A stretch of DNA of 64,000 bases, taken from positions 1-64,000 of IMG/VR virus record IMGVR_UViG_3300044712_002668; one strand, given 5' to 3'. A program made the translations under genes and the position numbers. Below are positions 24,958 to 47,888 of the stretch, in pieces; position 1 is the first letter of the stretch, and each line of letters begins with the position of its first letter. A model generated the notes under the pieces. It was not told where the DNA came from and ran no database searches. It was given only the letters and a program-made list of their open reading frames with translations.

Positions 24958-24971
24958 TATATAGGTATTTG

Positions 24972-30498: not shown

Positions 30499-30499
30499 T

Positions 30500-32264: not shown

Positions 32265-32423
32265 ATGTTAATAAAAACAGGTGATGCACAGATAATTGGT
32301 GTTGTGAAAGAAGCCAATAATGATGCGTTGGAAGACAAAGAAAGGGAAAAGATTTTAAAGCAAGCCCTGGAACAGGCTAAAAATTCACCAAGACCAATTA
32401 AAAAAACGAGTTCGGAGATCTAA
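32265..32423 (+). CDS. 52-aa ORF missed by the ORF track; N-terminus duplicates that of the protease gene
   Basis: GGAG RBS; MLIKTGDAQII...; TAATG-coupled to 32423. Confidence 0.65.
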   Translation: MLIKTGDAQIIGVVKEANNDALEDKEREKILKQALEQAKNSPRPIKKTSSEI

Positions 32424-35400
32424 TGTTAATAAAACTGGGAGAATCACAAATTCGTTCTGGAGATATACAATCTATTGAAAAAATATCAAATGATATAGAT
32501 TTGGATATTGAAAACAGAATGACTAAGTTTGCAAAACAATTAAAAGTTATAGCACCTCAGGCCAAAGATTTCTTATATTTTACCTGTGTTATGATGCACG
32601 CTGCCGAGGCTTCATTATTAAATGATGACGGTTCCTTGAAGAAGCATGCAGATGGAAGTCCGGTAAGAGCACAATGGGAAAAGGTTGGGGATCATGGAAT
32701 AAAATGGATATGTTCTGATAGGAATGTAAAACCATATAAAAATAATAATAATGATATTTTCCCTGAGAAGGAACTAAAGGTAGCTTACAAGAAATGGGTT
32801 GGACGTCCATTATGCCTCGATCATCAATCACAATCAGTTGATAAGATTCGAGGCGTTATTGTAGATACAGTTTGGGATGAGAAAAGAAAAAGAGTTATTG
32901 CACTATGTGCTTTGGATAAAAAGAATTATCCAGATCTTGCGCATAAAGTTGCATCAGGAGTAGCAACCAATGTTTCAATGGGTACTGCCGTAGGTCGTGC
33001 AGTATGTACTGAAGATGGTTGTCATCGTGTAGCGAAGACAGAACGTGATTTTTGTCAGCACATGAGAAATAAAAGCTGTTATGGTGAGATTAATCTTGAT
33101 TTATCTCCTATAGAGCTTTCATTAGTTGTTAGCGGTGCAGATCCAAAAGCCAAGGTAAAACATATTATTGCCAAGGATTTGGGGAAAGCAGCCGAAACAC
33201 TCACTGATTACCTTGGAATGAAAGAAGGTGATGGTGATATTACGAAAGACGATTTAAAGGAAGTTCAGAAAGATCTTGAACAATTGACCAAAAAAATCAG
33301 TAAGTTGACTGGCGAATTGGACGAGATAACGGAAGAAACCGATATACACGATGCGAGCGCTTATCCAGCTACTCGCTCAACATATGAGGTATCTGATGTT
33401 GAGACATCGGGAGTTAATTTAAGAGCGCCGGAGCAAATTCCATTATATGCTTCGGACTTACAAAAGGCAATAATGGGAGCGCAAGAAAAGATTGCGCAGC
33501 TTCAGGAGAATTATAACAGACTTTCTTCTTTGTTAAAGAGCGAGGAATCAATGACTAGAAAAAATGCATATTTTCAAGGAACAGTTGAGCCAAAACCAGG
33601 CGAGACAATGTATACACCAGATCCCTTGGCAGACAAGGCAAGGCTCATGGATAAGCATCTTCATGGTCCTGGCGATTTCCCAGACGTAGGTAATGTCGAG
33701 GGAATGTATCCAGGTATTACTCAGGATGACGAGGAGCTTAAAAAGAAGCTCCAACGTTTGGCAGAGGAGGAAGAGCGCGCGTTATTCCGTGAGGCTGCGC
33801 TAAAGAAAGCCAAGGAAAACCTGCTAAAGCGTCAAGCTGAATTAAAGAGCGAAGCTTATTGGCAGGGCACCACTGAGCCAAAACCTGGCCAGACCACATA
33901 TAAGCCAGATCCATTGAACAATGAAGCTCGTGAAGATGACAAACATCTTCAGGGTCAGAAACCATTCCCAGATGTGGGTAATGTTGATGGATTGTATGGC
34001 GATGACATGAAGACCAAAGAGAAACTTTCTCGTGCTTCATTGAATGCTAAATTCCGTAAGGCAGCCGGTTCTGATGGTCGTTTGGATAAGGCCGCATCTC
34101 GTTGGGAGGTCTATGCCAATGATACCCTTATTTTGACAGCTTCCGTTGATCAAATTACCAAGGGTAATGCTGACGTATTGTTTGAATCCGTTGCTACAAA
34201 GAGATTTGGAAAGAGTCTTTTGGACAGGATTCAATCAGAAGGTTTCGAGGCTACTCGTGCAGCTCTTCTAAAGACTGCCGGCGCCCCTCCAGCACCTCCA
34301 GCAATGCCTGAAATGCCTCCAGCAGCTCCTCCAGCAGGCGCTCCTCCAGCCCCTCCAGTTGGTGCTGAAGAGCCTCCACAGGCTCCAGAAAAGGGTGGGG
34401 ATCGTGTAAAGGAGATTATAAACGATCTTCGTGATCTTCTTGATGAGATTGATAATAAGATCAGCGATCTTGAAGAGCATTGTCTTGGACCAGTTGAAGA
34501 GGACGCCACTCATGTAGAGAATGTGGAACCAGCTCCAGAGCATGATTTCGCAGGTGAGGCTCCAAAGACAGCGTCTCAGTTACAGAGAATGCGTAAGACT
34601 GTAAATGGTATGTTGCGTGATGGAATCCATGAGATGATGTCAGATCTCAGTGCTCATGCAAAGGAAATCAAGACAGCAAGTGAGTTATATAAGCGCAGCT
34701 ATGATACAATGACTCCAGAGCAGCGCAAGTATTTGAATGCATTGGCAGCAGACGCCGTTACTGATGCAAAGTCTGCATTAAGAGAGTCTGTTCGTTTGAT
34801 GGGCGCAGTAGTAAAGTATGCTCATGGAACAGCAGAATTGGAGAAACGCGCTATGAAATCAGAAAAAGAAGAAGAGGATTGTAATGCAGCTGAGGATCCA
34901 ATGGGCGATCCAATGGGTGAGCTAACTGAGCTGACTCCAGAGACTTTGGGTGAGATTGGTGGTGAGGAAGAGATTCCTGGCCCAGAAGAGACAGAAGAAG
35001 CTGGTGTACCAACAGATGTAACAGAGAGTATTGAACAGGCTTTGGAGGAAGAGGCTGGTGATTTGCCAGAAGAGGAAGAGGAAGAGCTTGAGGAAGAGGA
35101 TGTTGGTAATGCTCCAGGTGATATTGTAAATCAGAATGGAAAAACAACAGTTGAATTGAATCCTCAAAATATGAAATTCCCAGGACCTGTACAAGCTTCT
35201 CTTAACACCAAGGAATCACGCGCACAAGCTCGTATGAAATTGGCAGAGAAGGCAGTTGAACTCGGTTTCAACGATCTTTCTGGCAAGGCCCATCCAAAGG
35301 GCAGCGTAGACGCTCCAAATGTTGAGACAAAGCCAAGTGTTGATGCCAAGTTCCATGTTCCACAAGATCTCAAGTCTTTGATGTTGGATCTTGCAAACCT

Positions 35401-35938
35401 TCCTCCAAAGGTTCGCAAGCAGGCTGAAGAGATTCACAATCTTGTAACCGCAGGACAGCTCGATCCAACAGACGTTGATGGATTGGTTGCTCATGGGGTA
35501 GATCCAGCGGCTGTAAAGTACTGGAAGGAAATGTGGGGTGCTGCTGGAGACTCTGAGTCAAAGGAATTTGCTACCAAGATGGTTGCAGAGCATCAGGCAT
35601 TCAAGGCAGCCGAGGACATGACATCTCATAAGGCTCGTATCAAGCAGGCTTATGAGTTAGCTTATGACATGGAAAGAAAGGGTATGATTGATCATGGACA
35701 GATTGATGATCAGGTCAATGAGATCATGAACTGGAATGAGGCTGGTTTCAACAGCGTCAAGAACATGATTGGACGTAAGCCTGTCGTAAAGCAAGCTTCT
35801 ATTCCAAATGTTGGCTTGTTACACTCCGGAGATGTAATACTTCCATCTGCACAGTTTGCAGGTGTTGAGTCCGTATCTTCTAATGGATCCGAAATCAAGA
35901 ACTACTTCGAGAGTTATTTTGCAAACAAGAGACTGTAA
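32423..35938 (+). CDS. Prohead (maturation) protease fused to scaffold-like region
   Basis: N-terminal domain with LCLDH, NVSMG and IELSLVVSGADPKA typical of phage prohead serine proteases; then coiled-coil, repeat, Pro-rich and acidic segments; lies between portal and capsid genes. Confidence 0.75.
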   Translation: MLIKLGESQIRSGDIQSIEKISNDIDLDIENRMTKFAKQLKVIAPQAKDFLYFTCVMMHAAEASLLNDDGSLKKHADGSPVRAQWEKVGDHGIKWICSDRNVKPYKNNNNDIFPEKELKVAYKKWVGRPLCLDHQSQSVDKIRGVIVDTVWDEKRKRVIALCALDKKNYPDLAHKVASGVATNVSMGTAVGRAVCTEDGCHRVAKTERDFCQHMRNKSCYGEINLDLSPIELSLVVSGADPKAKVKHIIAKDLGKAAETLTDYLGMKEGDGDITKDDLKEVQKDLEQLTKKISKLTGELDEITEETDIHDASAYPATRSTYEVSDVETSGVNLRAPEQIPLYASDLQKAIMGAQEKIAQLQENYNRLSSLLKSEESMTRKNAYFQGTVEPKPGETMYTPDPLADKARLMDKHLHGPGDFPDVGNVEGMYPGITQDDEELKKKLQRLAEEEERALFREAALKKAKENLLKRQAELKSEAYWQGTTEPKPGQTTYKPDPLNNEAREDDKHLQGQKPFPDVGNVDGLYGDDMKTKEKLSRASLNAKFRKAAGSDGRLDKAASRWEVYANDTLILTASVDQITKGNADVLFESVATKRFGKSLLDRIQSEGFEATRAALLKTAGAPPAPPAMPEMPPAAPPAGAPPAPPVGAEEPPQAPEKGGDRVKEIINDLRDLLDEIDNKISDLEEHCLGPVEEDATHVENVEPAPEHDFAGEAPKTASQLQRMRKTVNGMLRDGIHEMMSDLSAHAKEIKTASELYKRSYDTMTPEQRKYLNALAADAVTDAKSALRESVRLMGAVVKYAHGTAELEKRAMKSEKEEEDCNAAEDPMGDPMGELTELTPETLGEIGGEEEIPGPEETEEAGVPTDVTESIEQALEEEAGDLPEEEEEELEEEDVGNAPGDIVNQNGKTTVELNPQNMKFPGPVQASLNTKESRAQARMKLAEKAVELGFNDLSGKAHPKGSVDAPNVETKPSVDAKFHVPQDLKSLMLDLANLPPKVRKQAEEIHNLVTAGQLDPTDVDGLVAHGVDPAAVKYWKEMWGAAGDSESKEFATKMVAEHQAFKAAEDMTSHKARIKQAYELAYDMERKGMIDHGQIDDQVNEIMNWNEAGFNSVKNMIGRKPVVKQASIPNVGLLHSGDVILPSAQFAGVESVSSNGSEIKNYFESYFANKRL
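33557..34003 (+). repeat. Two copies of a ~53-aa unit in the scaffold region
   Basis: RKNAYFQGTVEPKPGETMYTPDPL...DKHLHG..FPDVGNVEGMY vs KSEAYWQGTTEPKPGQTTYKPDPL...DKHLQG..FPDVGNVDGLY. Confidence 0.9.
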
Positions 35939-35953
35939 TTAAAACAGCAAATG

Positions 35954-35983
35954 AGGGGCAGGTGTTTGCCTGCCCCTTGTTTT
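35954..35983 (+). terminator. Intrinsic terminator after protease/scaffold
   Basis: AGGGGCAGG/CCTGCCCCT stem followed by TGTTTT. Confidence 0.75.
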
Positions 35984-36001
35984 AAATCTTTAGAGGTATA
36001 T

Positions 36002-36685
36002 ATGACAAAATTTGATATCGCAAGTAGTATGGATTCTATTATAAGTAGCGAAAGTCATCAAAAAATCTTTACCAGGACCCCTATCACAAAGAAGGCTTCT
36101 TTTGAGAGAGAGGCATCTATTGAAGTTGATCCATCCACATCAGCTATCAAAGATTGCTTTGAGACTCTTAATACCATTTCTGAGATTCTTGATGATGCTG
36201 GGCACTTTGAAGCTTCTGCTTTTGCCATTCAAGCTATGGCTGCTTTAACAAAGCAGGCAAAAGAAAAGTGCGATGAAGAGTGTGAAGAAGAAAAAGAAGA
36301 AAAGAAAGAAAAAGAAGAGGAGGAGGAAGAAGAGGAAGAAGAGGAGGAGGAAGAAGAAGACGATGATGAAAATGATGCATTTGATTTAGCTTCAGTTTTC
36401 GCTTCCCTTGAATCTTTTGCTGCCAAGGATGAGGATCCAAAAGCCAAGGTGAGGAACCGTCCAGAGCCAATTTTTCCTGCCAATAGTCCAAAGGTAAAAG
36501 ACAAGAAGGATCATTTCCCAATCAATACCAAGGGGCGTGCTCGCAATGCTTTGGCCAGAGCCGGAGCATTCAAAGAGCCACCAGCATGGTATAAGGGTTC
36601 TTTATCATCTTTTCAAAAAGCAGTTAGAAGTGCCGTAAAGAAAGCATTTCCAGACATCAAAATTGAAAAGGAAAAGAAGGATTGA
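36002..36685 (+). CDS. Putative head protein with poly-Glu tract and DUF6582-like C-terminal domain
   Basis: GAGG RBS supports ATG at 36002; E/D run; HFPINTKGRARNALARA resembles DUF6582-type phage head motifs (from memory). Confidence 0.7.
   Translation: MTKFDIASSMDSIISSESHQKIFTRTPITKKASFEREASIEVDPSTSAIKDCFETLNTISEILDDAGHFEASAFAIQAMAALTKQAKEKCDEECEEEKEEKKEKEEEEEEEEEEEEEEEDDDENDAFDLASVFASLESFAAKDEDPKAKVRNRPEPIFPANSPKVKDKKDHFPINTKGRARNALARAGAFKEPPAWYKGSLSSFQKAVRSAVKKAFPDIKIEKEKKD
36275..36376 (+). repeat. GAA/GAG low-complexity tract (poly-Glu)
   Basis: Encodes EECEEEKEEKKEKEEEEEEEEEEEEEEEDDDEND. Confidence 0.9.
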
Positions 36686-37540: not shown

Positions 37541-38230
37541 ATGCTTAAATTAGTACAAGTTGGAAATGCTCTTCCAGTATCTTATCCAGTAGACCCTACC
37601 GCTGAATTTGAACCCGGAACTATCGCTCAATTCAAGGTTATGGGTAATAATATTGTTGTTGGTGTTAGTGATGGTAGAGCACCTTTCGGAATAATAGATG
37701 ATTATAAAACAAGAGCATATACAGCGCCATCTATTGATGAAGAGGTTGTAGCTGAGGTTCCCACGGTAGAACAGAATGGAAGGCTGGTATCTGCTGTGGA
37801 TGTAAAATGGGAACTAGCTAATCCTAATGTTATTCCCACTAGCTTTGTTACTAGTCCGGTGGATGTGGCTTTGATTCCACGTAATGGTGTAATTGTATTT
37901 CCGGCTGGCACACCTTTGAATTTTGATAGTACTGGTAGTGGAACTCCTGACTCTATAAGAACCGTAGTAAGTTATACATATCAGATTCCTAATATTTCTG
38001 GAGATGATTCTACAGCAGGAAGCGGTAAAGTTACAATATGGTTTCAAAGAGGTATATTTCAAACTGATAAATATGAAACAAATCAAAGATATCCAGTTAA
38101 TGCTATTTTATTTGTTTCTGAGAATGGTTTATTGACTACACAGCAACCAAGTGAGGAACATCCTGGTGTAGCTGTGGTTACCGGCCCTCCTACAGCCTTA
38201 TATAGCACATTAGAATTTTGCTGGTTGTAA
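37541..38230 (+). CDS. Capsid decoration-like protein, paralogue 1
   Basis: Shares N- and C-terminal blocks with 38240 and 46117 (LKLVQVG; ILFVSENGLLTT). Confidence 0.55.
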   Translation: MLKLVQVGNALPVSYPVDPTAEFEPGTIAQFKVMGNNIVVGVSDGRAPFGIIDDYKTRAYTAPSIDEEVVAEVPTVEQNGRLVSAVDVKWELANPNVIPTSFVTSPVDVALIPRNGVIVFPAGTPLNFDSTGSGTPDSIRTVVSYTYQIPNISGDDSTAGSGKVTIWFQRGIFQTDKYETNQRYPVNAILFVSENGLLTTQQPSEEHPGVAVVTGPPTALYSTLEFCWL

Positions 38231-38239
38231 GAGATATAA

Positions 38240-38644
38240 ATGTTCAAGATAGTTGAGAGTATAAACAAGGCACCAATCAGATTTCCAATAAAACCTGGTG
38301 TCAAGATAGTTCCGGGTTGTGTGGTACGTTTAAATGAATTGGATGGAAATATTGTAGTTGATATAAGTGATGGTGAGAATGTCTTTGGGATAGCATCAAA
38401 TGCTTGTAAGAATATTTCTGGTAGATTATGCTTTGGTGATATTGTAAATGTGCATGTACAAAGGATGATTATACGAACTGACCGTTTTGATAAAAAGTAT
38501 GATATAGATATAGGTTCTTCTTTATATGTGAATAAATATGGAATATTGACTTCATTAAAACCATTTGATAAATCCTATATTGTAGCAAAGGTAATAACTC
38601 CGGCATCAGAACAAAAGCAGTTTATTGAAGCATTATGGTTATGA
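38240..38644 (+). CDS. Capsid decoration-like protein, paralogue 2
   Basis: FKIVES; NIVVDISDG; SLYVNKYGILTS; matches 37541 minus its central insert. Confidence 0.55.
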   Translation: MFKIVESINKAPIRFPIKPGVKIVPGCVVRLNELDGNIVVDISDGENVFGIASNACKNISGRLCFGDIVNVHVQRMIIRTDRFDKKYDIDIGSSLYVNKYGILTSLKPFDKSYIVAKVITPASEQKQFIEALWL

Positions 38645-38706: not shown

Positions 38707-39054
38707 ATGGTAGCTGATGAGATTTGGAAGGATTTTTTTACTGATTATCAGACTCGTAGAGTTTTAGATAGTTCTGAGGTATTCAGGGAATATGCGCGAG
38801 CTGAACTTGAGAGGGATGCAGCCAGAAAAGCGCGTGAGCCCATAGAAGCATTAGAGAAAGCGGCAGCAATCAAGGATCAAGAGGAAGCATATTTGAATGA
38901 GATATATTCCCTCAACAAAAAAATTGCTGAAAATCCGGTATTGAAGGCGAAATTCAAGCAAGCGAAAGCGGCATTAGAGGCGCATCCGGAATTGATACAG
39001 AAGGTTGATCCTAATTTTATATATGGTTTGGACTTATTGGATCTAGGTGAATAA
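38707..39054 (+). CDS. Putative internal head protein
   Basis: 115 aa; DSSEVFREYAR leader motif. Confidence 0.7.
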   Translation: MVADEIWKDFFTDYQTRRVLDSSEVFREYARAELERDAARKAREPIEALEKAAAIKDQEEAYLNEIYSLNKKIAENPVLKAKFKQAKAALEAHPELIQKVDPNFIYGLDLLDLGE

Positions 39055-40794
39055 ATGAAAATAGCTAAGCAATCATTTAGTAATCTGTATACTTCTGAGG
39101 TGTATCGTGAGCTTGAGCGTAAAGCTGTCAAGAAGGGTTTTTTCGAACCTACAGCCAAGCAGGTAGTGGAGCATGCCATTCAGAAGAAAGCCTCTCCTAA
39201 AGAGGATTTAGAGGCTACAGGGGATGTTACTCAGGACATTGGCAAGTTGGTTGAAGCCTGTCGTAGGAAGGGTTATATAAAATTTGCTGATGATATTGAG
39301 AGCAAATTTGTTTTATATAAGCAGGCTGAATCTCAACTATACAATCTGAATGTGGACAAGATCAAGGACATTGAGGATTTTGCACATAAGGATGGAGATG
39401 TTGATATTGTAGATGCTGGTGACTTGGGAATGGTAGAAACCATTGAGAGTGCTGCACAGAAGATCTTGAGTGTAGTAAAGACTGAGCCAACTGGAAAGTT
39501 GGCGGCTTTTTCTGCGCATATTTTGAAGACTGCAGAACAACCAGCTATAACTATAAAACCTCCAGAGGGGCTTACAAATATATTGGCAAATGTTGGAAAC
39601 AAAACTGCAGATAGTATCTGGGTTGAAACAAAGAATAACATTGCAAAATATAAAAACTCTTTACAACCTATAAATATTACGTTTCCAGACTTTAAACTTT
39701 GGAATAATGATATTATAAAAATGTATAGTAAATATTCTAATATAAAAACAGAACGTATAATAATGTTTTTATCGTTATATACATCTTTGGGGGCTCAATT
39801 AAATGATATAAAGCCAATTGTTGCTGCCATATATAACAACCCAGAAAATATTAGAGGTATTTGTAAGCAATTAAGTATGACAGATTCTGATAATTATTTT
39901 ACAGGGGTTTCTAGAATAGAACTTCCAACTGATACAGGGGAACGTGAAGATCGTGGAAACACCAGTGTAGATAGACCAAACACTTACCTTGGTTGGTGGG
40001 CAAACAGAATAAAAGGTAATGTAGGAGAATTTTTTGCAGGCTCTCCAACAACAAAAGGTCAGGAAAATCCAAAATCAATTTATACAAAAGGATTAGATCA
40101 GCAAATAAGAGTTGGAGCTGTTGAAAACATTCAAGAATTGGCTGGTAAGATATTAATAGAGTGGAAAAAATTATATGATGATGTTGTAGGGCCAAATCAA
40201 TCTAAAATATCAGAAGCAAATACTGCGGTTTCAAACAAAATAAATGAGTTTACTGGACAAATAAAAACACTTAATTTGAGTGAAGATATAAAAAATGCAA
40301 ATGGATCAATTAATCCAAAACTTTGCTATGATTCTTTGAAGTCTTTTTCAGATAAATTAAACGGCATTATAAAAACAGCTGTAGAATTACAAAATGAGCT
40401 TAAAACATTATCTTCAGAAAATTATAAAGGACTTTCTGATACTGTTAATGGACTAACAGGAGAATTAAAATCAGATAAAATTGCCGTTCTTATGCAGGAT
40501 CCTAATGGTAAGAAAAATGTAGAAGAGAAAATATATGTTGCTCCCATGATGGTTAAACTTGGTAAAGTAAAAGTTTATCTTGAATCAATGGTAGATAATG
40601 CTTCCGATGAAATTAAACCAAAAATAAAAGAAAACATAGAAAAAGTAGACATTTTAATAGATTTGATTAATCAAGCAAAAGGTAAACCATTTGCAGAGTT
40701 GAAGGTAAATTTAGCCCAATATGATGTTGATTTTAATTCAATAGATCAGTTGTTAGGATGGGTAAACGCTACAGCGTCTAAAATGGGCTTATAA
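39055..40794 (+). CDS. Putative internal/ejection protein (conserved leader plus AT-rich cargo)
   Basis: 579 aa; TSEVYRELER, helical module, LKTA-E, then composition shift. Confidence 0.7.
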   Translation: MKIAKQSFSNLYTSEVYRELERKAVKKGFFEPTAKQVVEHAIQKKASPKEDLEATGDVTQDIGKLVEACRRKGYIKFADDIESKFVLYKQAESQLYNLNVDKIKDIEDFAHKDGDVDIVDAGDLGMVETIESAAQKILSVVKTEPTGKLAAFSAHILKTAEQPAITIKPPEGLTNILANVGNKTADSIWVETKNNIAKYKNSLQPINITFPDFKLWNNDIIKMYSKYSNIKTERIIMFLSLYTSLGAQLNDIKPIVAAIYNNPENIRGICKQLSMTDSDNYFTGVSRIELPTDTGEREDRGNTSVDRPNTYLGWWANRIKGNVGEFFAGSPTTKGQENPKSIYTKGLDQQIRVGAVENIQELAGKILIEWKKLYDDVVGPNQSKISEANTAVSNKINEFTGQIKTLNLSEDIKNANGSINPKLCYDSLKSFSDKLNGIIKTAVELQNELKTLSSENYKGLSDTVNGLTGELKSDKIAVLMQDPNGKKNVEEKIYVAPMMVKLGKVKVYLESMVDNASDEIKPKIKENIEKVDILIDLINQAKGKPFAELKVNLAQYDVDFNSIDQLLGWVNATASKMGL

Positions 40795-40807
40795 TAGTAG
40801 GTGTATC

Positions 40808-42793
40808 ATGCTTTCTAAATTTGCAAAAATGATAATAAACAAAACAGGTGGTTTAGATTTTTCTGAAGGTGTTGGAAAACAAAATCCATCTCAAAAAACA
40901 CCAGCGGTTGTTCCTTCTGCGCCAGGAGCTGTATCACCACCAGCTTCTGGAACTGTATCACCAACTTCAACATCACAACAAACAACTGGTGATGTAAAAC
41001 AACGCGAAAATATAATCCGTGGTATGCAGTTTGCTATGTCAAAACTTCAAGATGAGGTTTATGCTAAAGAAGACGTCGCAAAAACCATAATGGGACTTAG
41101 AAAGCAATCCGGTGATACCATTGAATCTGTTCAAAAGAAAATAAATGAATTGTCTGCTCAGTTTGGCAGAACTGCTAAACAAAAACAATATACAGCCGCA
41201 AACCTCGATGGAGTTTGGGGTTCTGCTACAGAAACAGCCTTGAAGAAAATTCAGGAGTTTATGGTGTATGCAAACATAACAGGCATACCAGCCATATCTC
41301 CTGATAGAGTCAAATCAAACGATGCAAATTCTATTTCAAAAGACATTGAAAGGGCTGAAAATAATACCAGAACCCTGGAATTGTTATTTCAACAATTGGG
41401 AATTAAATTCCAGTCTGGACTGGGTGGTTCTAGTCAAATTTTTGATCAAATTAAACAAGATCTCCTTGAGGAAGATACAAGAAATCCATTACAAGCACAG
41501 GCTCGTGGTAATGTTGCTGTTACAGCAGATAACTTAAAAGATATATATTCTTTTATATATTTTGCTGTTAGTGCTGAGTTGAAGATTAATGGTATTGTAC
41601 CAAATCCAGAAGAAAAAAATGGTAAAATTGGTAGCAGCATACAAAGTAAAGGAACACCACCAACGGCAAGAGTAGGAAACCAAGAAGTTGTAGATCCTTG
41701 GACTCATCCTTCTTATCGCAAAGCTCAAAAAGAAGAAGTTTTAAAATCATTGGCTGAATTGATTAAATCTTCCACAATTGTACGTTTATCTGAGAATAAA
41801 CCAGGTTGGGGAGTACGTTTTCCAGATGTACCAGAGGGTACAAATACTACGAAAGTTGAAGAAACTGATGCTGACGAAGAGGCTGGAGTTTTAGCTGATG
41901 ATCCTTATTCTGGAGCTGATATTCCTGATGATGAGTATCAGGTTGCACCACCAACTGGTATGAGTGGTGGTGTGATTTGTATTGCTCAGATTGATGCTAT
42001 GTTGACATGGTTTCAAAAAAGATCTTTCTTTGTTGAAAGTTATTTTGGTATTGGTTTAAATAAAAGAGATAAACACCCAATAGAAACAAACCGTTTTATA
42101 ACAAATGCTGATGTTCAACTAGCAAGAACTTATAGACAAATGGTTGAGAATCTTATTAGAATGTGGGGTGTGGTAAAGAAGGCATTGATGGATGATGGAT
42201 TTACCCCATATCAACCATTTAGTTTGAGTGATTTAGCAGATTTATATAGATTACACGGCTGGTCCACATATGGCTCTGGTGGAGGAATAATACCCGGACG
42301 TGGTGGCCCTGGATATGGACAATCCGGACGATATGGAAGAGGTCGTAGGGGGCCTGGTGGGCAGATTATTGAAGGATTACCAGAAACAACATCAGACCCT
42401 CCTTTTGGAGGAAAATATCTTGATATGAATCGTTTGATTAGTGTTTTCGGACCATCTGTTTCACGAGTAAAACCTGATCTTGTAAATGGTATTAAAGAGT
42501 ATTTTATTCAAGGAAGCATACCTTATAATGCGTTTACAAATATGGAAGTAAATACTTTTAGACGTGCCTTTACTTATTGTAAAGATGATAATGATTTAGC
42601 TTTGGCTATGCAAGATTTAAGTGCTTTCTTGCAAGGTGTATATGCTACCTGGGCAAAACGCAATCAACCACAGGCTTTGATACAAAGACAATCTGATTTT
42701 CATAGTTTATGGCAACAACAAATATGGTCTTTGCAACAGGGTGCAGAGTGGAAGCCAGTATATGAAAGGGCATTACCACACCTAAGACACTAA
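40808..42793 (+). CDS. Putative ejection protein with peptidoglycan-binding-like motif
   Basis: 661 aa; LDGVWGSATETALKKIQEF (41204-41260) resembles PG_binding_1. Confidence 0.6.
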   Translation: MLSKFAKMIINKTGGLDFSEGVGKQNPSQKTPAVVPSAPGAVSPPASGTVSPTSTSQQTTGDVKQRENIIRGMQFAMSKLQDEVYAKEDVAKTIMGLRKQSGDTIESVQKKINELSAQFGRTAKQKQYTAANLDGVWGSATETALKKIQEFMVYANITGIPAISPDRVKSNDANSISKDIERAENNTRTLELLFQQLGIKFQSGLGGSSQIFDQIKQDLLEEDTRNPLQAQARGNVAVTADNLKDIYSFIYFAVSAELKINGIVPNPEEKNGKIGSSIQSKGTPPTARVGNQEVVDPWTHPSYRKAQKEEVLKSLAELIKSSTIVRLSENKPGWGVRFPDVPEGTNTTKVEETDADEEAGVLADDPYSGADIPDDEYQVAPPTGMSGGVICIAQIDAMLTWFQKRSFFVESYFGIGLNKRDKHPIETNRFITNADVQLARTYRQMVENLIRMWGVVKKALMDDGFTPYQPFSLSDLADLYRLHGWSTYGSGGGIIPGRGGPGYGQSGRYGRGRRGPGGQIIEGLPETTSDPPFGGKYLDMNRLISVFGPSVSRVKPDLVNGIKEYFIQGSIPYNAFTNMEVNTFRRAFTYCKDDNDLALAMQDLSAFLQGVYATWAKRNQPQALIQRQSDFHSLWQQQIWSLQQGAEWKPVYERALPHLRH

Positions 42794-42804
42794 TCAGGAA
42801 ATAA

Positions 42805-44091
42805 ATGAACGGAGATATTCAATACATATCAGATACACTGCTTCTGGAGAAGACATTTAAAATACTGTCTTCTCTGGAAGCTGATCCGTTTAATAAAAAA
42901 GCCGGTATTATAGATAATTTAAAATCCTCAATTGGTTCTGGTATTGATGAAGCTATCAAACAACATGTTAGTTTTGATTCGCCAGAATCTACCATTCATA
43001 CTGTGATTGGCATTCTTCAAGGACCAGTTTTATGGGCAATTGGTGGTTGGCAGATTTCTTTATTGGCCACTGCCGCTCAAGTTCTTTGGGGTATTGATAT
43101 TTATACCATTATCAAGAAGCTTGTCCAAATAATATCAGGCATGTTGCAGGTAAAGAAACAATTGTCATTTGATGATGTTACAAACGCAATTAGAAGTGTA
43201 ATGCCAGCTGGATTGATGGAAGAAAAAAAGACAGCCGGTGATTTTTTGTTTGGTTTGAGAGAACTTGAAGAACAAGGTAAAATCTTAAAAGCTGCTTCTT
43301 ATAAAATACCAAAAGAGCAAGATAGATTGATTGTTCTAGCTGCTGGAGCCTCTACTCAACCAGCCGCTGGAAATATAAAAAACCTATTATCATTCATGGG
43401 AAAGGCCAGAGGCATGTTCCTGATTATGGGTATTTTCAGATGGATAATTGTAACACTATTAATGGGAACTGGCTTATTGGCCGGTGGTCATATTTTGAAG
43501 AAGTTTGTTGGTAAAGAACTGGCTGAAACTGGAATTCAAGATAAATGGAATAAGCTTATTCAAGGAGATGTCAGTGGGCTTTGGGGAGCAAAACCAGAGG
43601 CCAAGCCTGATGCAAAGCCAGAAACCAAAACTGATACTAAAGCTGCTCCATCTATTTGGTCAAAAATATTCGGGGATGGAACTTCTACGGTTCCATCTGC
43701 ACCTGATATAAAAACAAAACAACCATCTTTATTATCAAGGCTGTATTCTAATATCGTAGGAAAGCCAGAAAAAAGTTCAGACATGGTATATGAACCATTG
43801 AGAGATAATTATGGTAAATTAAGAACTATTGCTGAGTTGATTTGGGATTGGATTATGGATGAGTTTGAGGATCAATATCCAAAGCTTGAATCTTTCAAAG
43901 AAAAAATAACAAGCTCACAATATTTTAAGAAAGTAGAGCTTACGCTTAAAGCAGCATACAATAAGGGAAAATCTGATAATAGAAGTCCTGAAGGACTTAT
44001 TATGCCAGATGAATTACCAAATCGTGAAGCGGTTTTTAACTATATGAAGCCAATATTGGATCCAATATTCGCACAGGCAAAAAGAGGTTGA
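42805..44091 (+). CDS. Putative membrane-active ejection protein
   Basis: 428 aa; long hydrophobic segments (VIGILQGPVLWAIGGWQISLLATAAQVLWG; GMFLIMGIFRWIIVTLLMGTGLLAGG). Confidence 0.55.
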   Translation: MNGDIQYISDTLLLEKTFKILSSLEADPFNKKAGIIDNLKSSIGSGIDEAIKQHVSFDSPESTIHTVIGILQGPVLWAIGGWQISLLATAAQVLWGIDIYTIIKKLVQIISGMLQVKKQLSFDDVTNAIRSVMPAGLMEEKKTAGDFLFGLRELEEQGKILKAASYKIPKEQDRLIVLAAGASTQPAAGNIKNLLSFMGKARGMFLIMGIFRWIIVTLLMGTGLLAGGHILKKFVGKELAETGIQDKWNKLIQGDVSGLWGAKPEAKPDAKPETKTDTKAAPSIWSKIFGDGTSTVPSAPDIKTKQPSLLSRLYSNIVGKPEKSSDMVYEPLRDNYGKLRTIAELIWDWIMDEFEDQYPKLESFKEKITSSQYFKKVELTLKAAYNKGKSDNRSPEGLIMPDELPNREAVFNYMKPILDPIFAQAKRG

Positions 44092-44094
44092 AAA

Positions 44095-45345
44095 ATGTTT
44101 GAGGATAGTGAAATTTTTGACGAATATGCAAAAATAGCATTCGCACAGGGCCTGGTTGCCGAAGCGGAAGAGGATAAAGAGGCACCAAAACCAAAAACGC
44201 GCAACAAAGATACTGATGAATCAATTCAGTTGCTGTATGGAATCAATCCAGAGAGTATTTTTAAAGAGGATTGTATTTTGGATGCAGCTCATCCTGAATC
44301 AAAATCAGTTGGCAGATCTTATGATGCCATGAACTCAATTGTTGAGAATCTTCATGAAAGACAAGATATTATGGCTTATATAGCTCAGAAAGTACCGAGA
44401 GGTGTGCTGACTATGGAGCGTTATGTCAAGGCCAAGGAAGAACTTGTCAATTCTATCATCAGAGCAGCGTTTCTATTTGATAATAGAAATGAAACAGCGT
44501 TGATGTCATTGGCTGATAAGTGTGCTGAACAAGTAGCATCTCAAAGAGTAAAGAACGCTGCTGCTGGTATTCTGCCTGCATTGGTTCCCGCTGCAGGTAC
44601 TGCACTGGTTGGAACCGGAGTTGCTGCAGGAGCAGTGCTTGCTGGCTATTTGGCATGGGGGCCAACTTTAGCTGTGGGCGTTAAAAACAACGGACAGCAA
44701 GTGATTGATGCTTTGATCAATTTGCAGGGAGAAGAATATTTCTCCACTTTATTACAATCTGTTTACGATACAGTTTTGGATTTGATGGAAATAACTGGTA
44801 AAGTATCAGCTTATAAAATCAAAATCGATCAAGATCAGATGACAAATCCTGATAATACACAATTGAGTCCTAGTTTTTTTGCGGAGGCAAATAATGCCCT
44901 TACCATATATACAAGGGCATTAGGAATTGTAAAAGAAAATATTCCAAAGTGGGTATCAACTTTACAAAGAGCACATACAACAGCAAAAATGCTTGAATCT
45001 CAAGATAACACTGATATTTCAAATAAATTCTATTATGTTCTTGGAATGGTAAAATGGGATCAAGTTGATATAGTGATAGATAAACTTACAGGGCGCAAGA
45101 TATTCAGTGGTTTATCAGAATCATTCATGAAGAAAAGAGAACCAACTATCGGTGGTTTATATGGAGCTATAAAGCTTGAAGAGGAGTCCGCAAAGAAATA
45201 TATTGAGGTTACCTCTCAAATATCAAGGCAAGCACCAATAACACCTGGAATTTCACAACCAATAACACCTGGAATTTCCCAAAAACCTGAAGCTGGAAAA
45301 TCAACTCCTAAATCTGGAATCAAGAAACCAGAATTTTATTTCTAA
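44095..45345 (+). CDS. Putative membrane-active ejection protein
   Basis: 416 aa; EDSEIFDEYAK leader, VKNA-A followed by a ~40-aa Gly/Ala hydrophobic stretch. Confidence 0.55.
   Translation: MFEDSEIFDEYAKIAFAQGLVAEAEEDKEAPKPKTRNKDTDESIQLLYGINPESIFKEDCILDAAHPESKSVGRSYDAMNSIVENLHERQDIMAYIAQKVPRGVLTMERYVKAKEELVNSIIRAAFLFDNRNETALMSLADKCAEQVASQRVKNAAAGILPALVPAAGTALVGTGVAAGAVLAGYLAWGPTLAVGVKNNGQQVIDALINLQGEEYFSTLLQSVYDTVLDLMEITGKVSAYKIKIDQDQMTNPDNTQLSPSFFAEANNALTIYTRALGIVKENIPKWVSTLQRAHTTAKMLESQDNTDISNKFYYVLGMVKWDQVDIVIDKLTGRKIFSGLSESFMKKREPTIGGLYGAIKLEEESAKKYIEVTSQISRQAPITPGISQPITPGISQKPEAGKSTPKSGIKKPEFYF
45234..45278 (+). repeat. 21-bp direct repeat with 24-bp period (PITPGISQ x2)
   Basis: ACCAATAACACCTGGAATTTC at 45234 and 45258. 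Confidence 0.9.
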
Positions 45346-45346
45346 T

Positions 45347-46021
45347 ATGAAACAAAATCAAGTAAAACTTTCTTCTATAAAGGATTTGCTAATAACAAAT
45401 CCTTTGCTTGATTTAAAAAAATCACAAGAGAAGATAAAAGCTAATGAGGCTAAACCTGCCAATCCAACTATAAAACAATGGAAAGAGTATTTAAAATCAG
45501 ATGGAAAATATACTGGTGATGTAAATTCTCCCGATATTGATAATGACTTTAAAACAGCAATGATAAATGCAGAAAGTGCATTATCAAATGATGTCCCTTC
45601 AATAAAGGGATTGATTTGGACAGGAAATAGTATCAATCCTGCAATTTCTATTACAGATTATCAACAGGCATTAAAGCTTTTAATCGAGAAAAAGAAGCCG
45701 AATTCTGAAAAAGAAAGTACATCTCAAAAAACTTCAAGCAGAATTGAAATTCTTAAAAAAATGGCCCATGCAACAATGGATGCAATTGGCCCGATTACCG
45801 AGGCAATGCAAGATGCTCCTAATGCTACAAAGATGCAAAAAGATCCGGGAGCTGCCGCTGCAGAAACGGGAAATCCAGAAACTTCTCCAATTCAAAACGT
45901 AATGATAAATAAACTGCCTCAAAAAAAGCAAAAACAAGAAGATAAGCTGCTTCAAAATAAGCCTAATATTGACGACAGAATGCTTCAACTTGTAGATTTA
46001 ATAGAAAAAACACAACATTGA
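45347..46021 (+). CDS. Hypothetical virion protein, possible degenerate PG-binding motif
   Basis: IKQWKEYLKSDGKYTGDVNSPDIDNDFKTAM; KKMA-H. Confidence 0.6.
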   Translation: MKQNQVKLSSIKDLLITNPLLDLKKSQEKIKANEAKPANPTIKQWKEYLKSDGKYTGDVNSPDIDNDFKTAMINAESALSNDVPSIKGLIWTGNSINPAISITDYQQALKLLIEKKKPNSEKESTSQKTSSRIEILKKMAHATMDAIGPITEAMQDAPNATKMQKDPGAAAAETGNPETSPIQNVMINKLPQKKQKQEDKLLQNKPNIDDRMLQLVDLIEKTQH

Positions 46022-46116: not shown

Positions 46117-46779
46117 ATGGCATTAGAATTAGTTCAACCAGGTATTCAATCACTTGGTCAGTTTGATGGTTATGATAACGTTTACTTAACTGTTAAGGGT
46201 GGAGAAGTTGCCACAATCGTACAAGCGGCTGTTAAGGGCGCTGATTTGGCATCTTGGGATGTAAACAATGACGGATATGTTTCTCCAGCTGGAAAGGGTC
46301 AGGCCCGTCCTGCTGCTACAACAAATCTTGTCAGCGGATCCCGTCCATTGTTCCTTGTTGATGACGGTATTGCTGGATATGGAACTCTCTTTGGTTCTGT
46401 TGTTGGTGGGATTGCTGGCCAGTTAACTACTGGACAGGTTCTTGGACCACACAGTGCCACAGGTTCTGGTAAACTCACACTCTGGGACAAACCAGGAACA
46501 TATGCAGTAACACTTGATGCAGTTGACACCACTGCAGGTACTGGCTTGATTCCAAGCAATACCACATTGCAGATTGGTGACAAGCTCTATGCAACCAGCG
46601 CAGGTCTTTTGACCCCAACACTCGGTTCTGCTTTCGAGAACGTTGTTATCGGACGTTTCCTTAATTTCGAGACCAATAAGGGTGGTGCTCTTGTCAACAC
46701 CCCAGTTACCTTGGCTACTACAACCCAGGTACAGCAAATGGCTCGTGCCCTCATTTACTTCGCTCCTCCAATTGCGTAA
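46117..46779 (+). CDS. Capsid decoration/cement protein, paralogue 3
   Basis: Directly upstream of the capsid gene, strong codon bias, LELVQPG and LQIGDKLYATSAGLLTP blocks. Confidence 0.6.
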   Translation: MALELVQPGIQSLGQFDGYDNVYLTVKGGEVATIVQAAVKGADLASWDVNNDGYVSPAGKGQARPAATTNLVSGSRPLFLVDDGIAGYGTLFGSVVGGIAGQLTTGQVLGPHSATGSGKLTLWDKPGTYAVTLDAVDTTAGTGLIPSNTTLQIGDKLYATSAGLLTPTLGSAFENVVIGRFLNFETNKGGALVNTPVTLATTTQVQQMARALIYFAPPIA

Positions 46780-46822: not shown

Positions 46823-46877
46823 GATCCACTAAAGCTGCTGATGGATTTTGGTAGCTTATTTACAGGAGGTTCTTAAT

Positions 46878-47888
46878 ATGAGTTTATTTAGTACACAAGG
46901 CGAAATGAACGCCACTAGTTTGAAGGATGCTTTGCAGACACTTGTAAAGTATGCAGCGATTCTTGAGGAAGGTCAGCCAAGCAATATGCAGCTTGCTGGT
47001 CGTCCAAGTCTCGATGATGGAAAGCGTGATGAGCTTATTGCTCGCGCTATCATGACCCAGGAGGGCAAACTTGCTCTTGCCCAGGCCATGGCGAACCCAA
47101 TTCGCCGCAACTTGGACTACCAAGGTATTGCACGTCGTCTCTTGGTTGTTGACCCTCTTCCACAGGGTGTCAACCCAACCTATGAGCGTGATATTGACGT
47201 AGCCGCTACCGTTATTTCAAGCAACGGTACCGGTGGTGAGAGCCGTGTATTCGGTGATCGTATCACCGTTCCAACATTCGAGCTTTACTCCAACCCAACC
47301 GTTCGTATCTCCGAGGTTCGTCGTCGTAGATTCAACGTCATTGACCGTGCTGTTCAAAAGGCACGTCAGGAGCTTATGGCCCAGGAAGATGCAAACATCT
47401 TCGCAGCCATTGACTCTGCGGCTACAGTAGAGAACGTTGCACAGGATATTGCTGACAGCGGCTTGCTCAAGCGTGACCTTGTTGAAATCAAGGCCCAGAT
47501 TGATCGCTGGGACTTGGTAACAACCAAGTTCTTCATGAACATCAACGAGTTTACTGACATCTTGAACTGGGCATCCGGTGGTGGCCAGGGTCCAGGTGGT
47601 GGTGAAGTTGATCCAGTTACACAGCGTGAAATTCTCCAGACCGGCCTCTATGCCCACATCTGGGGCGCTGACATCATGGTTTCCAAGATTGTTCCACCAG
47701 GAACCGTTTACGGAGCCGCAGACCCAGAGTTCGTTGGTGTTATGCCAATCCGTCAGGACATTGAAGTTCTCCCAGCCGACGAGCCAAAGCAATTGAAGCT
47801 CGGATGGGTTGTTTCTGAGGAGATCGGTATCGGTATCGTCAACCCACGTGGTGTTGCCGTTTCTCGTAAGTCAACTCTCCCAGGATAA
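46878..47888 (+). CDS. Major capsid protein (HK97-like fold)
   Basis: AGGAGG RBS, strongest codon bias in window, LAQAMANPIRRNLDYQGIARRLLVVDPLPQG and VPTFELYSNP..ISEV blocks, strong terminator after it. Confidence 0.85.
   Translation: MSLFSTQGEMNATSLKDALQTLVKYAAILEEGQPSNMQLAGRPSLDDGKRDELIARAIMTQEGKLALAQAMANPIRRNLDYQGIARRLLVVDPLPQGVNPTYERDIDVAATVISSNGTGGESRVFGDRITVPTFELYSNPTVRISEVRRRRFNVIDRAVQKARQELMAQEDANIFAAIDSAATVENVAQDIADSGLLKRDLVEIKAQIDRWDLVTTKFFMNINEFTDILNWASGGGQGPGGGEVDPVTQREILQTGLYAHIWGADIMVSKIVPPGTVYGAADPEFVGVMPIRQDIEVLPADEPKQLKLGWVVSEEIGIGIVNPRGVAVSRKSTLPG

What the first reader, a model, noticed from the sequence alone, without database searches (positions are those of the whole stretch)
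38707..45345. Second shared leader family with an abrupt composition switch at the cleavage motif
Seen: DSSEVFREYAR (38767), YTSEVYRELER (39088) and EDSEIFDEYAK (44101) open three ORFs; 39055 and 44095 also share AH....V...(G/S).VE.+....+..+..(K/T).P.G. In 39055 the DNA changes by eye from biased codons (AAG, GAG, CGT) to AT-rich codons (AAA, ATA, TTA) right after LKTA at 39534. Inference: conserved loading leaders onto which new cargo domains are grafted by recombination, an exchangeable-payload cassette system.
Basis: partly seen in the sequence, partly recalled or inferred. Interest (0 to 1): 0.6.

Follow-up and report, generated by a model that had tools for sequence, protein, structure and literature searches.

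The report
Huge-phage head protein with swappable tail domain
In the head-assembly gene block of a huge phage, one protein has a strongly conserved front part that is shared in diverged form with a neighbouring gene, and a rear part that related phages have swapped for unrelated versions exactly where the window's codon usage flips; whether the front part loads the protein into the capsid is untested.

Summary
The window is the start of a 336-kb phage genome whose major capsid protein is 54% identical to that of Bacillus phage G.

- **Motif.** It occurs in only three ORFs of the genome (38707, 39055, 44095), all near an N-terminus.
- **Shared module.** The leaders of 39055 (B) and 44095 (C) are homologous (hhalign 94%, E 2e-7). 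ORF 38707 (A) shares only the short motif.
- **Codon switch.** GC3 in B falls from 0.39 to 0.18 at codon 158 (nt 39529). No shuffle in 2000 matched it, and it is the second-strongest step among 181 genes.
- **Relatives.** The A-B-D-E-C-F block is syntenic in about 15 related contigs. The 160-residue N-module of B matches 981 protein clusters; in all 150 listed hits it is N-terminal.
- **Exchange.** The region after it comes in at least two mutually undetectable types. Two phage pairs have 80-86% identical leaders on different types. Their DNA similarity (77-82% on the left flank) stops at the PTGK codons and resumes inside gene D.

So the exchangeable-cassette idea holds for B among relatives. 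It does not hold for A or C. The "cleavage motif" and the "loading" role are untested, and LKTA is clade-specific. Selection could also explain the window's own codon step. No Pfam or PHROG family matches. The closest analogues are the T4 capsid-targeting sequence and the long SPN3US propeptides.

The parts
38707..39054 (+). ORF A, 115 aa. A small protein conserved over its whole length, directly abutting the start of B. It carries the motif SSEVFREYAR at residues 22-31 (nt 38770-38799).
   Evidence: Orthologues are 31-56% identical over the full length in 22 loci and the motif SSEV[WF]R.Y is conserved. There is no profile-level homology to B or C.
39055..39537 (+). N-terminal module of B (residues 1-161). 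It holds the SEVYRELER helix (nt 39094-39120), a helical hairpin, the stretch AH.DGD...ETI...K.PTGK (nt 39382-39498) and an amphipathic helix ending in LKTAE.
   Evidence: It is 38-58% identical in all relatives, and all 406 pairs are detectable. The profile finds 981 clusters; in all 150 listed hits it lies at residues 1 to about 160. It is homologous to the N-terminus of C. AF2 gives low confidence and isolated helices. GC3 is 0.39.
39487..39537 (+). Junction: the PTGK codons (39487-39498) through LKTAE (39523-39537). This is the domain boundary, the site of the GC3 change point (nt 39529, support 39502-39640), and the place where DNA similarity between related phages breaks off.
   Evidence: change point; P 100%, G 95%, K 87% across 148 representatives; K.AQ about 40%; break points at the Lys codon of PTGK in two pairs.
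39538..40794 (+). C-terminal region of B (residues 162-579): a low-complexity linker followed by two helical bundles ('type I'). This is the exchangeable part. GC3 is 0.18.
   Evidence: Only 69 of 406 pairs are detectable by BLASTP. Types I and II are related only in the last ~76 columns. The AF2 model is confident and all-helical. Fold searches give only generic helical-bundle matches.
40808..42793 (+). ORF D, 661 aa. It is the functional partner of B: in 850-1320-aa relatives it is fused to B in one polypeptide. The right-hand break point of the cassette lies in its first ~30 codons.
   Evidence: The D profile matches the C-terminal half of the long-class proteins, and the genomic context of P0063 shows the fusion. 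Similarity between pairs resumes inside D.
42805..44091 (+). ORF E, 428 aa, with hydrophobic segments. It is a syntenic, fast-evolving member of the block.
   Evidence: 24-32% identity to its orthologues.
44095..45345 (+). ORF C, 416 aa. Residues 5-105 (nt 44107-44409) are a diverged copy of the B N-module. A Gly/Ala-rich hydrophobic segment and a helical domain follow.
   Evidence: hhalign probability 93.7%, E 1.9e-7. Orthologues align over nearly the whole length. AF2 gives low confidence for the N-terminal 190 residues and a confident helical region at 190-340.
45347..46021 (+). ORF F, 224 aa, the last fast-evolving gene before the decoration and capsid genes.
   Evidence: 25-33% identity to its orthologues.
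32423..35938 (+). A 1171-aa protein with a head-maturation protease domain at residues 107-217. It is the candidate processing enzyme.
   Evidence: phrog_18299, E 5e-16. 33% identical to phage G gp19.
46848..47888 (+). Major capsid protein. The likely true start is the ATG at 46878 (MSLF...).
   Evidence: phrog_2522, E 8.5e-78. 54% identical to phage G gp27. 85-93% identical in the related contigs. N-terminal alignment.

Best explanation
ORF 39055 (B) is a virion-head protein of a huge phage distantly related to Bacillus phage G. It is built from two parts with different evolutionary behaviour.

**The front part.** The first ~160 residues form a strongly conserved, non-globular module made of linear motifs: SEVYRELER, AH.DGD, ETI and K.PTGK. 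A diverged copy opens the neighbouring gene C.

**The rear part.** After a low-complexity linker comes a helical-bundle domain. Within this phage clade it is an exchangeable cassette. Homologous recombination uses the conserved leader as the left arm and the start of gene D as the right arm, and replaces one C-domain type with another. In many relatives D is fused to B.

**The codon switch.** The codon-usage switch in the window sits on that junction.

**Inferred, not shown.**
- The N-module docks the protein into the assembling prohead, as the T4 capsid-targeting sequence and the 124-127-residue propeptides of SPN3US ejection proteins do. The 1171-aa protease protein at 32423 may then trim it.
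- The helical rear part, together with D, is the payload: an internal or ejected head protein.
For: **Head-module context.** Terminase, portal, protease fusion, decoration protein and capsid protein surround the block.

**Conserved synteny.** A-B-D-E-C-F-decoration-capsid is conserved in about 15 related contigs of up to 454 kb.

**N-module.** All pairs are detectable at 38-58% identity, against 69 of 406 pairs for the rest of the protein. The profile matches 981 clusters; in all 150 listed hits the module is N-terminal. It is homologous to the N-terminus of C. It is internally duplicated in some relatives.

**Exchange.**
- Types I and II are mutually exclusive and share only their last ~76 columns.
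- The types are interleaved on the leader tree, with at least 5-8 changes forced by well-supported branches.
- P0030 and P0033 are 86% identical over residues 1-206 and then unrelated. P0018 and P0035 are 80% identical over 1-168 and then unrelated.
- At the DNA level, similarity runs to the PTGK codon (82% identity in one pair, 77% in the other), is absent for 1.1-1.3 kb, and resumes in D (71% in the first pair, 69-80% in short patches in the second).

**Link to D.** B-D fusions exist in relatives.

**Window junction.** The GC3 and codon step lies at the same junction.

**Structure.** AF2 gives a low-confidence leader and a confident helical C-domain.

**Precedents.** T4 CTS with diverse internal proteins (PMC3012670), and long conserved propeptides in the SPN3US paralogues gp53 and gp54 (PMC5694885, PMC10052503).
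Against: - There are no virion proteomics, so presence in the head and any cleavage are inferred from gene position only.
- No known cleavage consensus is present. The leader contains no [ASG]-x-E, and there is no conserved (L/I)-x-E at the junction (sequence, conservation).
- K.AQ/LKTA is clade-specific.
- C and A show no cargo variation.
- The window has no close relative: the best leader identity is 58%. Its own C-domain cannot be shown to be recently acquired.
- The low GC3 continues through D (0.20), so the step could equally be a GC3-rich island covering A and the B leader.
- The same-sign GC3 difference in 15 of 16 orthologues points to a systematic cause rather than a scar.
- The metagenome contigs that show the swap could in principle be chimeric at the conserved leader. 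Four assemblies from different samples and the interleaving on the tree argue against this.
Confidence: 0.6

Rival explanations
1. The window has seen no exchange. The GC3 and codon step reflects different selective regimes inside one gene. The conserved leader keeps the codon style of highly expressed, constrained virion genes (AAG, GAG). The weakly constrained helical rear part drifts to the AT-rich mutational equilibrium of the genome.
For: - GC3 of the leader is at least that of the rest in 15 of 16 orthologues, whose local GC ranges from 0.32 to 0.47.
- The capsid, decoration and protease genes share the AAG/GAG-rich style.
- The low GC3 of the rear part continues into D, E and F.
- The C-domain is the fastest-evolving segment.
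Against: - Both halves are translated from one mRNA, so expression level cannot differ.
- The shift is very large (AAG+GAG 0.71 to 0.18) and abrupt.
- Across the 18 genes and segments of the module, the correlation between GC3 and conservation is weak (Spearman rho 0.36, p 0.14).
- The well-conserved 229-aa gene has GC3 of only 0.20.
- Cassette replacement at exactly this junction is documented in relatives.
Confidence: 0.3
2. B, with D, is a scaffolding or core protein rather than a delivered payload. The conserved N-module binds the very conserved capsid shell or portal. The helical rear part only fills space, so almost any helical bundle will do and it diverges or is replaced freely.
For: - The gene lies between the protease and the capsid gene.
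- The rear part is all-helical and matches only generic bundles.
- The capsid protein is 85-93% identical while the block is 21-38% identical.
- No scaffold protein is otherwise identified. D has a faint Phage_scaffold hit (E 0.28).
Against: - The acidic 244-aa protein at 35951 and the 950-residue extension of the protease are alternative scaffold candidates.
- C and E carry hydrophobic, membrane-like segments, which are more typical of ejected proteins.
- There is no sequence or fold match to any known scaffold.
Confidence: 0.25
3. The three-way 'leader family' is partly coincidence. A is unrelated to B and C and merely shares a short amphipathic-helix motif.
For: Profile comparison of A against B or C is not significant (E about 0.01 over 10-17 columns). 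A is conserved over its whole length as a separate small protein.
Against: The motif occurs nowhere else in the 1330 ORFs, is N-terminal in all three, and is conserved in the orthologues of all three. BLASTP of A against C gives E 0.004 over 72 residues. A abuts the start of B in every relative.
Confidence: 0.5

Closest known systems
T4 capsid-targeting sequence (CTS) and the hypervariable internal proteins of T-even phages
   Same: A conserved N-terminal signal is attached to diverse, fast-changing head-internal proteins encoded in the head-gene region. The review PMC3012670 describes the internal proteins as highly diverse, with only a conserved CTS to encapsidate them. In the T4 case the diversity is thought to come from an arms race with the host.
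   Different: The T4 CTS is 10-20 residues and is cut by gp21 (PMC5694885). Here the module is ~160 residues, there is no sequence similarity, and the protease belongs to the phage G gp19 lineage. Neither cleavage nor packaging is shown. Only one slot plus one paralogue carry the module, rather than several internal-protein genes.
Long N-terminal propeptides of the giant-phage ejection-protein paralogues SPN3US gp53 and gp54 (phiKZ-like phages)
   Same: Paralogous head proteins of a giant phage share a conserved N-terminal region of more than 100 residues while the rest has diverged (34% identity in SPN3US, PMC5694885). That region is proposed to be a prohead-targeting propeptide.
   Different: The SPN3US propeptides are removed at a defined motif ending in Glu by gp245 (PMC10052503). 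The window's leader has no [ASG]-x-E site and there is no detectable homology. The recombinational replacement of the downstream domain shown here was not among the passages of the two SPN3US papers that I read.
Polymorphic toxin architecture (CdiA/Rhs type). This comparison rests on my own knowledge, not on a test.
   Same: A conserved N-terminal part, a short demarcating motif, variable C-terminal domains swapped by recombination, and often a composition drop after the motif.
   Different: There is no toxin domain and no immunity gene, and this is a phage head module, not a secretion system. Pfam finds nothing in the C-domains.
Phage tail-fibre and receptor-binding-protein mosaicism. This comparison rests on my own knowledge.
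   Same: A conserved N-terminus anchors the protein to conserved virion parts, and the C-terminus is exchanged by recombination among relatives.
   Different: The gene lies in the head module between the protease and the capsid gene. The domains are helical bundles, not fibre or beta-helix folds.

Membership tests
T4-type capsid-targeting sequence / internal protein | Short (10-20 residue) N-terminal propeptide | tested here: not met
   The conserved module is ~160 residues in B and ~105 in C. The CTS length is taken from PMC5694885.
T4-type capsid-targeting sequence / internal protein | Removal by the prohead protease at a defined site | not testable with these tools
   This needs virion mass spectrometry. 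No conserved (L/I)-x-E lies at the junction.
T4-type capsid-targeting sequence / internal protein | Conserved signal on otherwise diverse proteins | tested here: met
   For B: the leader is conserved in all pairs, while the rest is detectable in 69 of 406 pairs and comes in at least two types. For C: not met, because the orthologues are collinear throughout.
phiKZ/SPN3US long-propeptide ejection proteins | N-terminal region of more than 100 residues shared by paralogues in the head module | tested here: met
   B 14-149 aligns with C 5-105, hhalign probability 93.7%, E 1.9e-7.
phiKZ/SPN3US long-propeptide ejection proteins | Cleavage motif of the gp245/gp175 type (small residue, any residue, Glu) | tested here: not met
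   There is no [ASG]-x-E in B residues 1-165 (sequence). The protease domain groups with phage G gp19 and cluster C mycobacteriophages; no phiKZ-like phage is among the organisms named in the output.
phiKZ/SPN3US long-propeptide ejection proteins | Sequence homology to gp53/gp54 or other known members | tested here: not met
   B has no tblastn hit in 50,697 phage records, and there are no PHROG or Pfam hits.
Polymorphic toxin (CdiA/Rhs-like) | C-terminal toxin domain with an adjacent immunity gene | tested here: not met
   Pfam finds no domain in any C-domain class. The downstream gene D is a conserved partner that is often fused to B.
Phage scaffolding protein | Match to a scaffold family or fold | tested here: inconclusive
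   The position and helical content fit. No family match exists; only D gives Phage_scaffold at E 0.28. The fold hits are generic bundles.

The most novel reading that the evidence does not exclude
The ~160-residue N-module is a general prohead-incorporation signal of a large, uncharacterised clade of huge phages (981 protein clusters at 50% identity). The helical domains behind it are host-directed effectors delivered with the DNA. Recombination at the PTGK junction shuffles them between phages, making a polymorphic effector slot inside the phage head. A long signal of this kind would also offer a way to load proteins into giant capsids.
Probability: 0.25. Interest if true: 0.75.

Novelty: new variant of a known kind. 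Interest (0 to 1): 0.55.

Why it matters
Huge phages pack many proteins into their heads, but outside T4 and the phiKZ group almost nothing is known about how those proteins are addressed to the capsid or how they evolve.

This analysis defines a large unannotated family of 981 clusters with no Pfam or PHROG model. It has a clear two-part design, a precise junction (K-x-P-T-G-K), a paralogue in the same module, a fusion partner (D), and DNA-level evidence that the rear domain is replaced as a cassette between related phages.

If the front module is a targeting signal, it gives a testable address label for giant capsids. It would also point to a place where these phages vary a delivered protein. 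If it is not, the case still shows that a sharp codon-usage step inside a gene can mark a domain and recombination boundary.

Tried and rejected
**Family scans.** Pfam and PHROGs scans of A-F found nothing usable. The only leads were PG_binding_1 for D at E 0.05, in 1 of 15 orthologues, and Phage_scaffold at E 0.28. I treat both as noise-level.

**Searches for relatives or solved structures.**
- tblastn of B against 50,697 phage records found no match.
- A profile search of the PDB found only designed or natural helical bundles.
- Foldseek against the PDB found nothing at E 0.001 or better.
- BFVD gave two uncharacterised phage proteins at TM about 0.12.
- VIA-align wide gave Z of at most 10 on helical bundles, below the level that is meaningful for helical folds.
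- The ESM Atlas gave no usable hit.

**Phage G.** Profiles of A, B, C and D were run against the 29 kb around the phage G capsid gene and found nothing. The family is absent or unrecognisable there.

**Complex prediction.** The B N-module with protein A gave 'no answer' (score 0.00). This is not evidence for or against binding.

**Protease domain.** It has no PDB relative by sequence.

**Cleavage consensus.** I looked for T4-like and phiKZ-like motifs in the leader and found none conserved.

**Length classes as different cargo.** I considered that the 'long' and 'short' classes carry different cargo. I rejected this. The long proteins are B-D fusions. The one short-class representative whose context I examined occupies the same slot, with an extra 332-aa gene after it.

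**Conservation as the cause of GC3.** This got only weak support across the 18 genes and segments of the module (Spearman rho 0.36, p 0.14).

**Not used.** Two contig look-ups returned no DNA. The reads tools were not used.
Full report
**What the window is.** The window is the first 64 kb of a single 335,988-bp contig with 37.9% GC. Almost all genes lie on the + strand. The region around the finding is a head-morphogenesis module:
- large terminase (23077-24957)
- portal (24954-26903)
- a tyrosine-phosphatase-like gene (30482-31591)
- a 1171-aa protein whose residues 107-217 match a head-maturation protease (32423-35938)
- an acidic 244-aa protein
- several small ORFs
- the six ORFs called here A (38707), B (39055), D (40808), E (42805), C (44095) and F (45347)
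- a head-decoration protein (46117-46779)
- the major capsid protein (46848-47888)

The capsid protein is 54% identical to gp27 of Bacillus phage G and the protease domain is 33% identical to phage G gp19. The phage is therefore a distant relative of phage G. A-F have no Pfam or PHROG match.

**Checking the observation.**
- *Motif.* SE[IVL][FYW].[ED][YLF] occurs in exactly three of the 1330 ORFs of 50 aa or more in the genome. These are A, B and C, at residues 23, 14 and 5. It is conserved in the orthologues of each.
- *Second similarity between B and C.* The AH...VE...P.G stretch is real. A profile of 30 B leaders against a profile of 15 C orthologues gives hhalign probability 93.7%, E 1.9e-7. 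B 14-149 aligns with C 5-105, and B carries an extra helical hairpin.
- *ORF A.* It does not reach significance as a profile against either B or C. It shares the short motif only.
- *Composition switch.* It is also real. The maximum-likelihood GC3 change point in B is after codon 158 (nt 39529; support interval codons 149-195). GC3 falls from 0.39 to 0.18, and 0 of 2000 shuffles are as strong. It is the second-strongest within-gene step among 181 genes. Lys AAG falls from 71% to 16%, Glu GAG from 71% to 22%, and Ile ATA rises from 18% to 63%. The two halves sit near the 89th and 12th percentiles of the genome's genes for AAG+GAG use.

**Relatives.** A word-based search with B found 18 proteins of 397-625 aa. 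Most match only the first quarter of B, at 43-54% identity. In the alignment the first ~160 residues are strongly conserved up to a motif I.K.AQ (LKTAEQ in the window). A Gly/Pro/Gln/Ser-rich linker follows, then sequence that barely aligns.

Contig look-ups and a scan of viral contigs gave about 15 distinct related loci, on contigs of up to 454 kb. All have the same gene order: A-B-D-E-C-F-decoration-capsid. Identity to the window varies greatly along the module:

| Gene or segment | Identity to the window |
|---|---|
| Capsid protein | 85-93% |
| 229-aa protein | 68-78% |
| Decoration protein | 59-66% |
| Protease protein | about 53% |
| A | about 48% |
| B leader | 38-58% |
| B rear part | mostly undetectable |
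| D | 21-26% |
| E | 24-32% |
| C | 31-38% |
| F | 25-33% (51% over a third of F in one locus) |

The block from the rear of B to F is thus the fastest-evolving part of a head module whose shell protein is almost frozen.

**Is the rear of B merely fast-evolving, or exchanged?**
- *Two types.* All 406 pairs of leaders are detectable by BLASTP, but only 69 pairs of rear parts are. The rear parts fall into type I (which includes the window) and type II. Profile comparison relates these only in their last ~76 columns (probability 86%, E 4.8e-6).
- *Family size.* A profile of the leader alone, searched against 1.84 billion representative proteins, found 981 clusters at E 0.001 or better (866 at 1e-10). 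In all 150 listed hits the module is at residues 1 to about 160.
- *Tree.* On a tree of 148 leaders, type I and type II are interleaved. Well-supported branches force at least 5 and 8 changes.
- *Sister pairs.* Several strongly supported sister pairs have near-identical leaders on different rear parts. P0030 (type II) and P0033 (type I) are 86% identical over residues 1-206 and then unrelated. P0018 (type II) and P0035 (type I) are 80% identical over 1-168 and then unrelated.
- *DNA level.* Contigs L024 and L025 are collinear at 82% identity up to the Lys codon of PTGK in B. They show no similarity for about 1.1 kb, and resume at 71% about 30 codons (L024; about 16 in L025) into D. Contigs L005 and L026 break at the same PTGK codon after a 77%-identical left flank, show no similarity for about 1.3 kb, and resume only in short patches (69-80%) from about 38 codons into D.

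This is cassette replacement between homologous flanks, not divergence in place. The caveat is that these are metagenome assemblies, and an assembler can cross between strains at a conserved stretch. Four assemblies from different samples and the pervasive interleaving on the tree make that an unlikely general explanation.

**What the length classes mean.** Family members fall into three length groups: about 360-490, 510-650 and 850-1320 aa.
- The long ones are not new cargo. A profile of D matches their C-terminal halves, for example P0063 residues 599-1222. In that phage a single 1236-aa gene occupies the place of B plus D.
- The short ones form essentially one clade. In the one context examined, the gene lies in the same slot and is followed by an extra 332-aa gene and then D.

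The family therefore occupies a single syntenic slot, with fusion and fission, plus the paralogous module on C. It is not a set of many cargo genes per genome. C orthologues are collinear over nearly their whole length and A orthologues are conserved end to end, so neither shows exchange.

**The junction.** Across 148 representatives the near-universal landmark is K-x-P-T-G-K (P 100%, G 95%, K 87%). The following amphipathic helix ending in K.AQ is present in about 40%, mainly the window's clade. The DNA break points lie at PTGK. The window's change point, at codon 158, lies 10 codons after PTGK (145-148). PTGK itself lies one codon before the support interval of the change point, which starts at codon 149.

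Nothing shows that LKTA is a cleavage site. The leader has no small-x-Glu motif of the phiKZ/SPN3US type, and there is no conserved Leu/Ile-x-Glu at the junction. The protease is of the phage G gp19 lineage, for which I found no specificity data in the searches I ran.

**Structure.**
- *B.* AlphaFold2 with 17 sequences gives the conserved leader low confidence: pLDDT 31-76, isolated helices. The variable rear part is confident: pLDDT 80-96, a four-helix-type bundle at about 181-488 and a three-helix bundle at 490-579.
- *C.* The model behaves the same way: the conserved first ~190 residues are low-confidence and 190-340 are confident helices.

High conservation without a predicted autonomous fold suits a region that works through linear motifs bound to conserved partners. 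This is inference. Fold and profile searches return only generic helical bundles.

**Why the codon step?** Two explanations remain, and they are not exclusive.
- *For a recombination origin.* Both halves share one mRNA, the shift is extreme and abrupt, it coincides with a documented exchange junction, and the relatives span a wide GC3 range (0.08-0.52 in the leader). A cassette from an AT-richer relative would look like this.
- *For a selective origin.* Leader GC3 is at least that of the rest in 15 of 16 orthologues. The leader's codon style matches that of the capsid, decoration and protease genes. The low GC3 continues into D, E and F, so the picture can also be read as a GC3-rich island covering A plus the leader.
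- *Limits.* Across the 18 genes and segments of the module, the correlation of GC3 with conservation is weak (Spearman rho 0.36, p 0.14). The window has no close relative, so its own history cannot be dated.

**Comparison with known systems.**
- *T4.* The closest functional analogue is the T4 capsid-targeting sequence. This 10-20-residue propeptide addresses a highly diverse set of internal proteins to the scaffolding core (PMC3012670, PMC5694885).
- *SPN3US.* The other close analogue is the 124-127-residue propeptides of the SPN3US head proteins gp50, gp53 and gp54. The paralogues gp53 and gp54 share conserved N-termini and are proposed to be targeted in the same way (PMC5694885, PMC10052503).
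- *This system.* It resembles these in design: a conserved N-terminal region on paralogous, diverging head-module proteins. It is not a member of either by sequence, length, cleavage motif or protease lineage (see the membership tests).
- *Other comparisons.* The resemblance to polymorphic toxins and to tail-fibre mosaicism is architectural only.

**Verdict.**
- *Observation.* Confirmed.
- *Interpretation.* Partly supported. An exchangeable C-terminal cassette behind a conserved N-terminal module is well supported for B among its relatives. It is not supported for A or C. The loading and cleavage roles are plausible analogies that remain untested.
- *Novelty.* I rate this a new variant of a known kind, of moderate interest.

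Noticed in passing
window 37541-38230, 38240-38644 and 46117-46779: The 229-aa and 134-aa proteins begin alike (MLKLVQ... and MFKIVE...) and both end in ...WL. They resemble the start of the 220-aa decoration protein (MALELVQ...), so they may be paralogues of it. The 229-aa protein is unusually conserved, at 68-78% identity to relatives.
   Followed up: partly
window 46848-47888: The true start of the capsid gene is probably the ATG at 46878 (MSLF...), as in most relatives. A conserved ~41-residue N-terminal extension that phage G gp27 lacks (MSLF..GEMNA.SVKDALNTLVKYAAILEE(G/N)QP) could be a small propeptide.
   Followed up: partly
window 46848-47888 compared with 39538-46021: There is an extreme rate contrast inside one module. 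The capsid protein is 85-93% identical to relatives in which D, E, C and F are only 21-38% identical.
   Followed up: yes
related loci L005, L006 and the contexts: GIY-YIG and LAGLIDADG homing-endonuclease genes are scattered through this head module in relatives. In the contig of P0002 (and L007, L018 and L019, where only a 76-aa piece matches) the capsid gene seems to be interrupted by one. They could promote local gene conversion.
   Followed up: no
window 40808-42793 (D), residues 127-160: The invariant pattern DG.WG..T..AL resembles the core of the peptidoglycan-binding domain PG_binding_1. The match is sub-threshold (E 0.05) and is seen in only 1 of 15 orthologues. D also has a Gly/Arg-rich stretch near residue 490-520.
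   Followed up: partly
relatives P0008, P0020, P0030, P0033: The second half of the leader (AH.DGD...ETI...K.PTGK) is tandemly duplicated in these proteins, which suggests it is a self-contained functional unit.
   Followed up: partly
window 32423-35938: The protease domain (residues ~107-217) is fused to a ~950-residue extension. The gene has its own GC3 step at codon 249, from 0.22 to 0.37.
   Followed up: no
window 30482-31591: A tyrosine / dual-specificity phosphatase gene (PF03162, E 7.6e-10) lies between the portal and the protease and is syntenic in relatives. It may be a packaged enzyme.
   Followed up: no
window 35951-36685: This 244-aa protein has a long Glu/Asp run (residues ~105-140). 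It is a candidate scaffold-like or DNA-mimic acidic protein.
   Followed up: no
genome G000 contig C1 264527-266575 (outside the window): This gene has the strongest within-gene GC3 step in the genome, from 0.20 to 0.54 at codon 505.
   Followed up: no
window 44095-45345 (C) residues ~155-195 and 42805-44091 (E): Gly/Ala-rich hydrophobic segments look like membrane-inserting helices. This would fit proteins that act at the host envelope after ejection.
   Followed up: no
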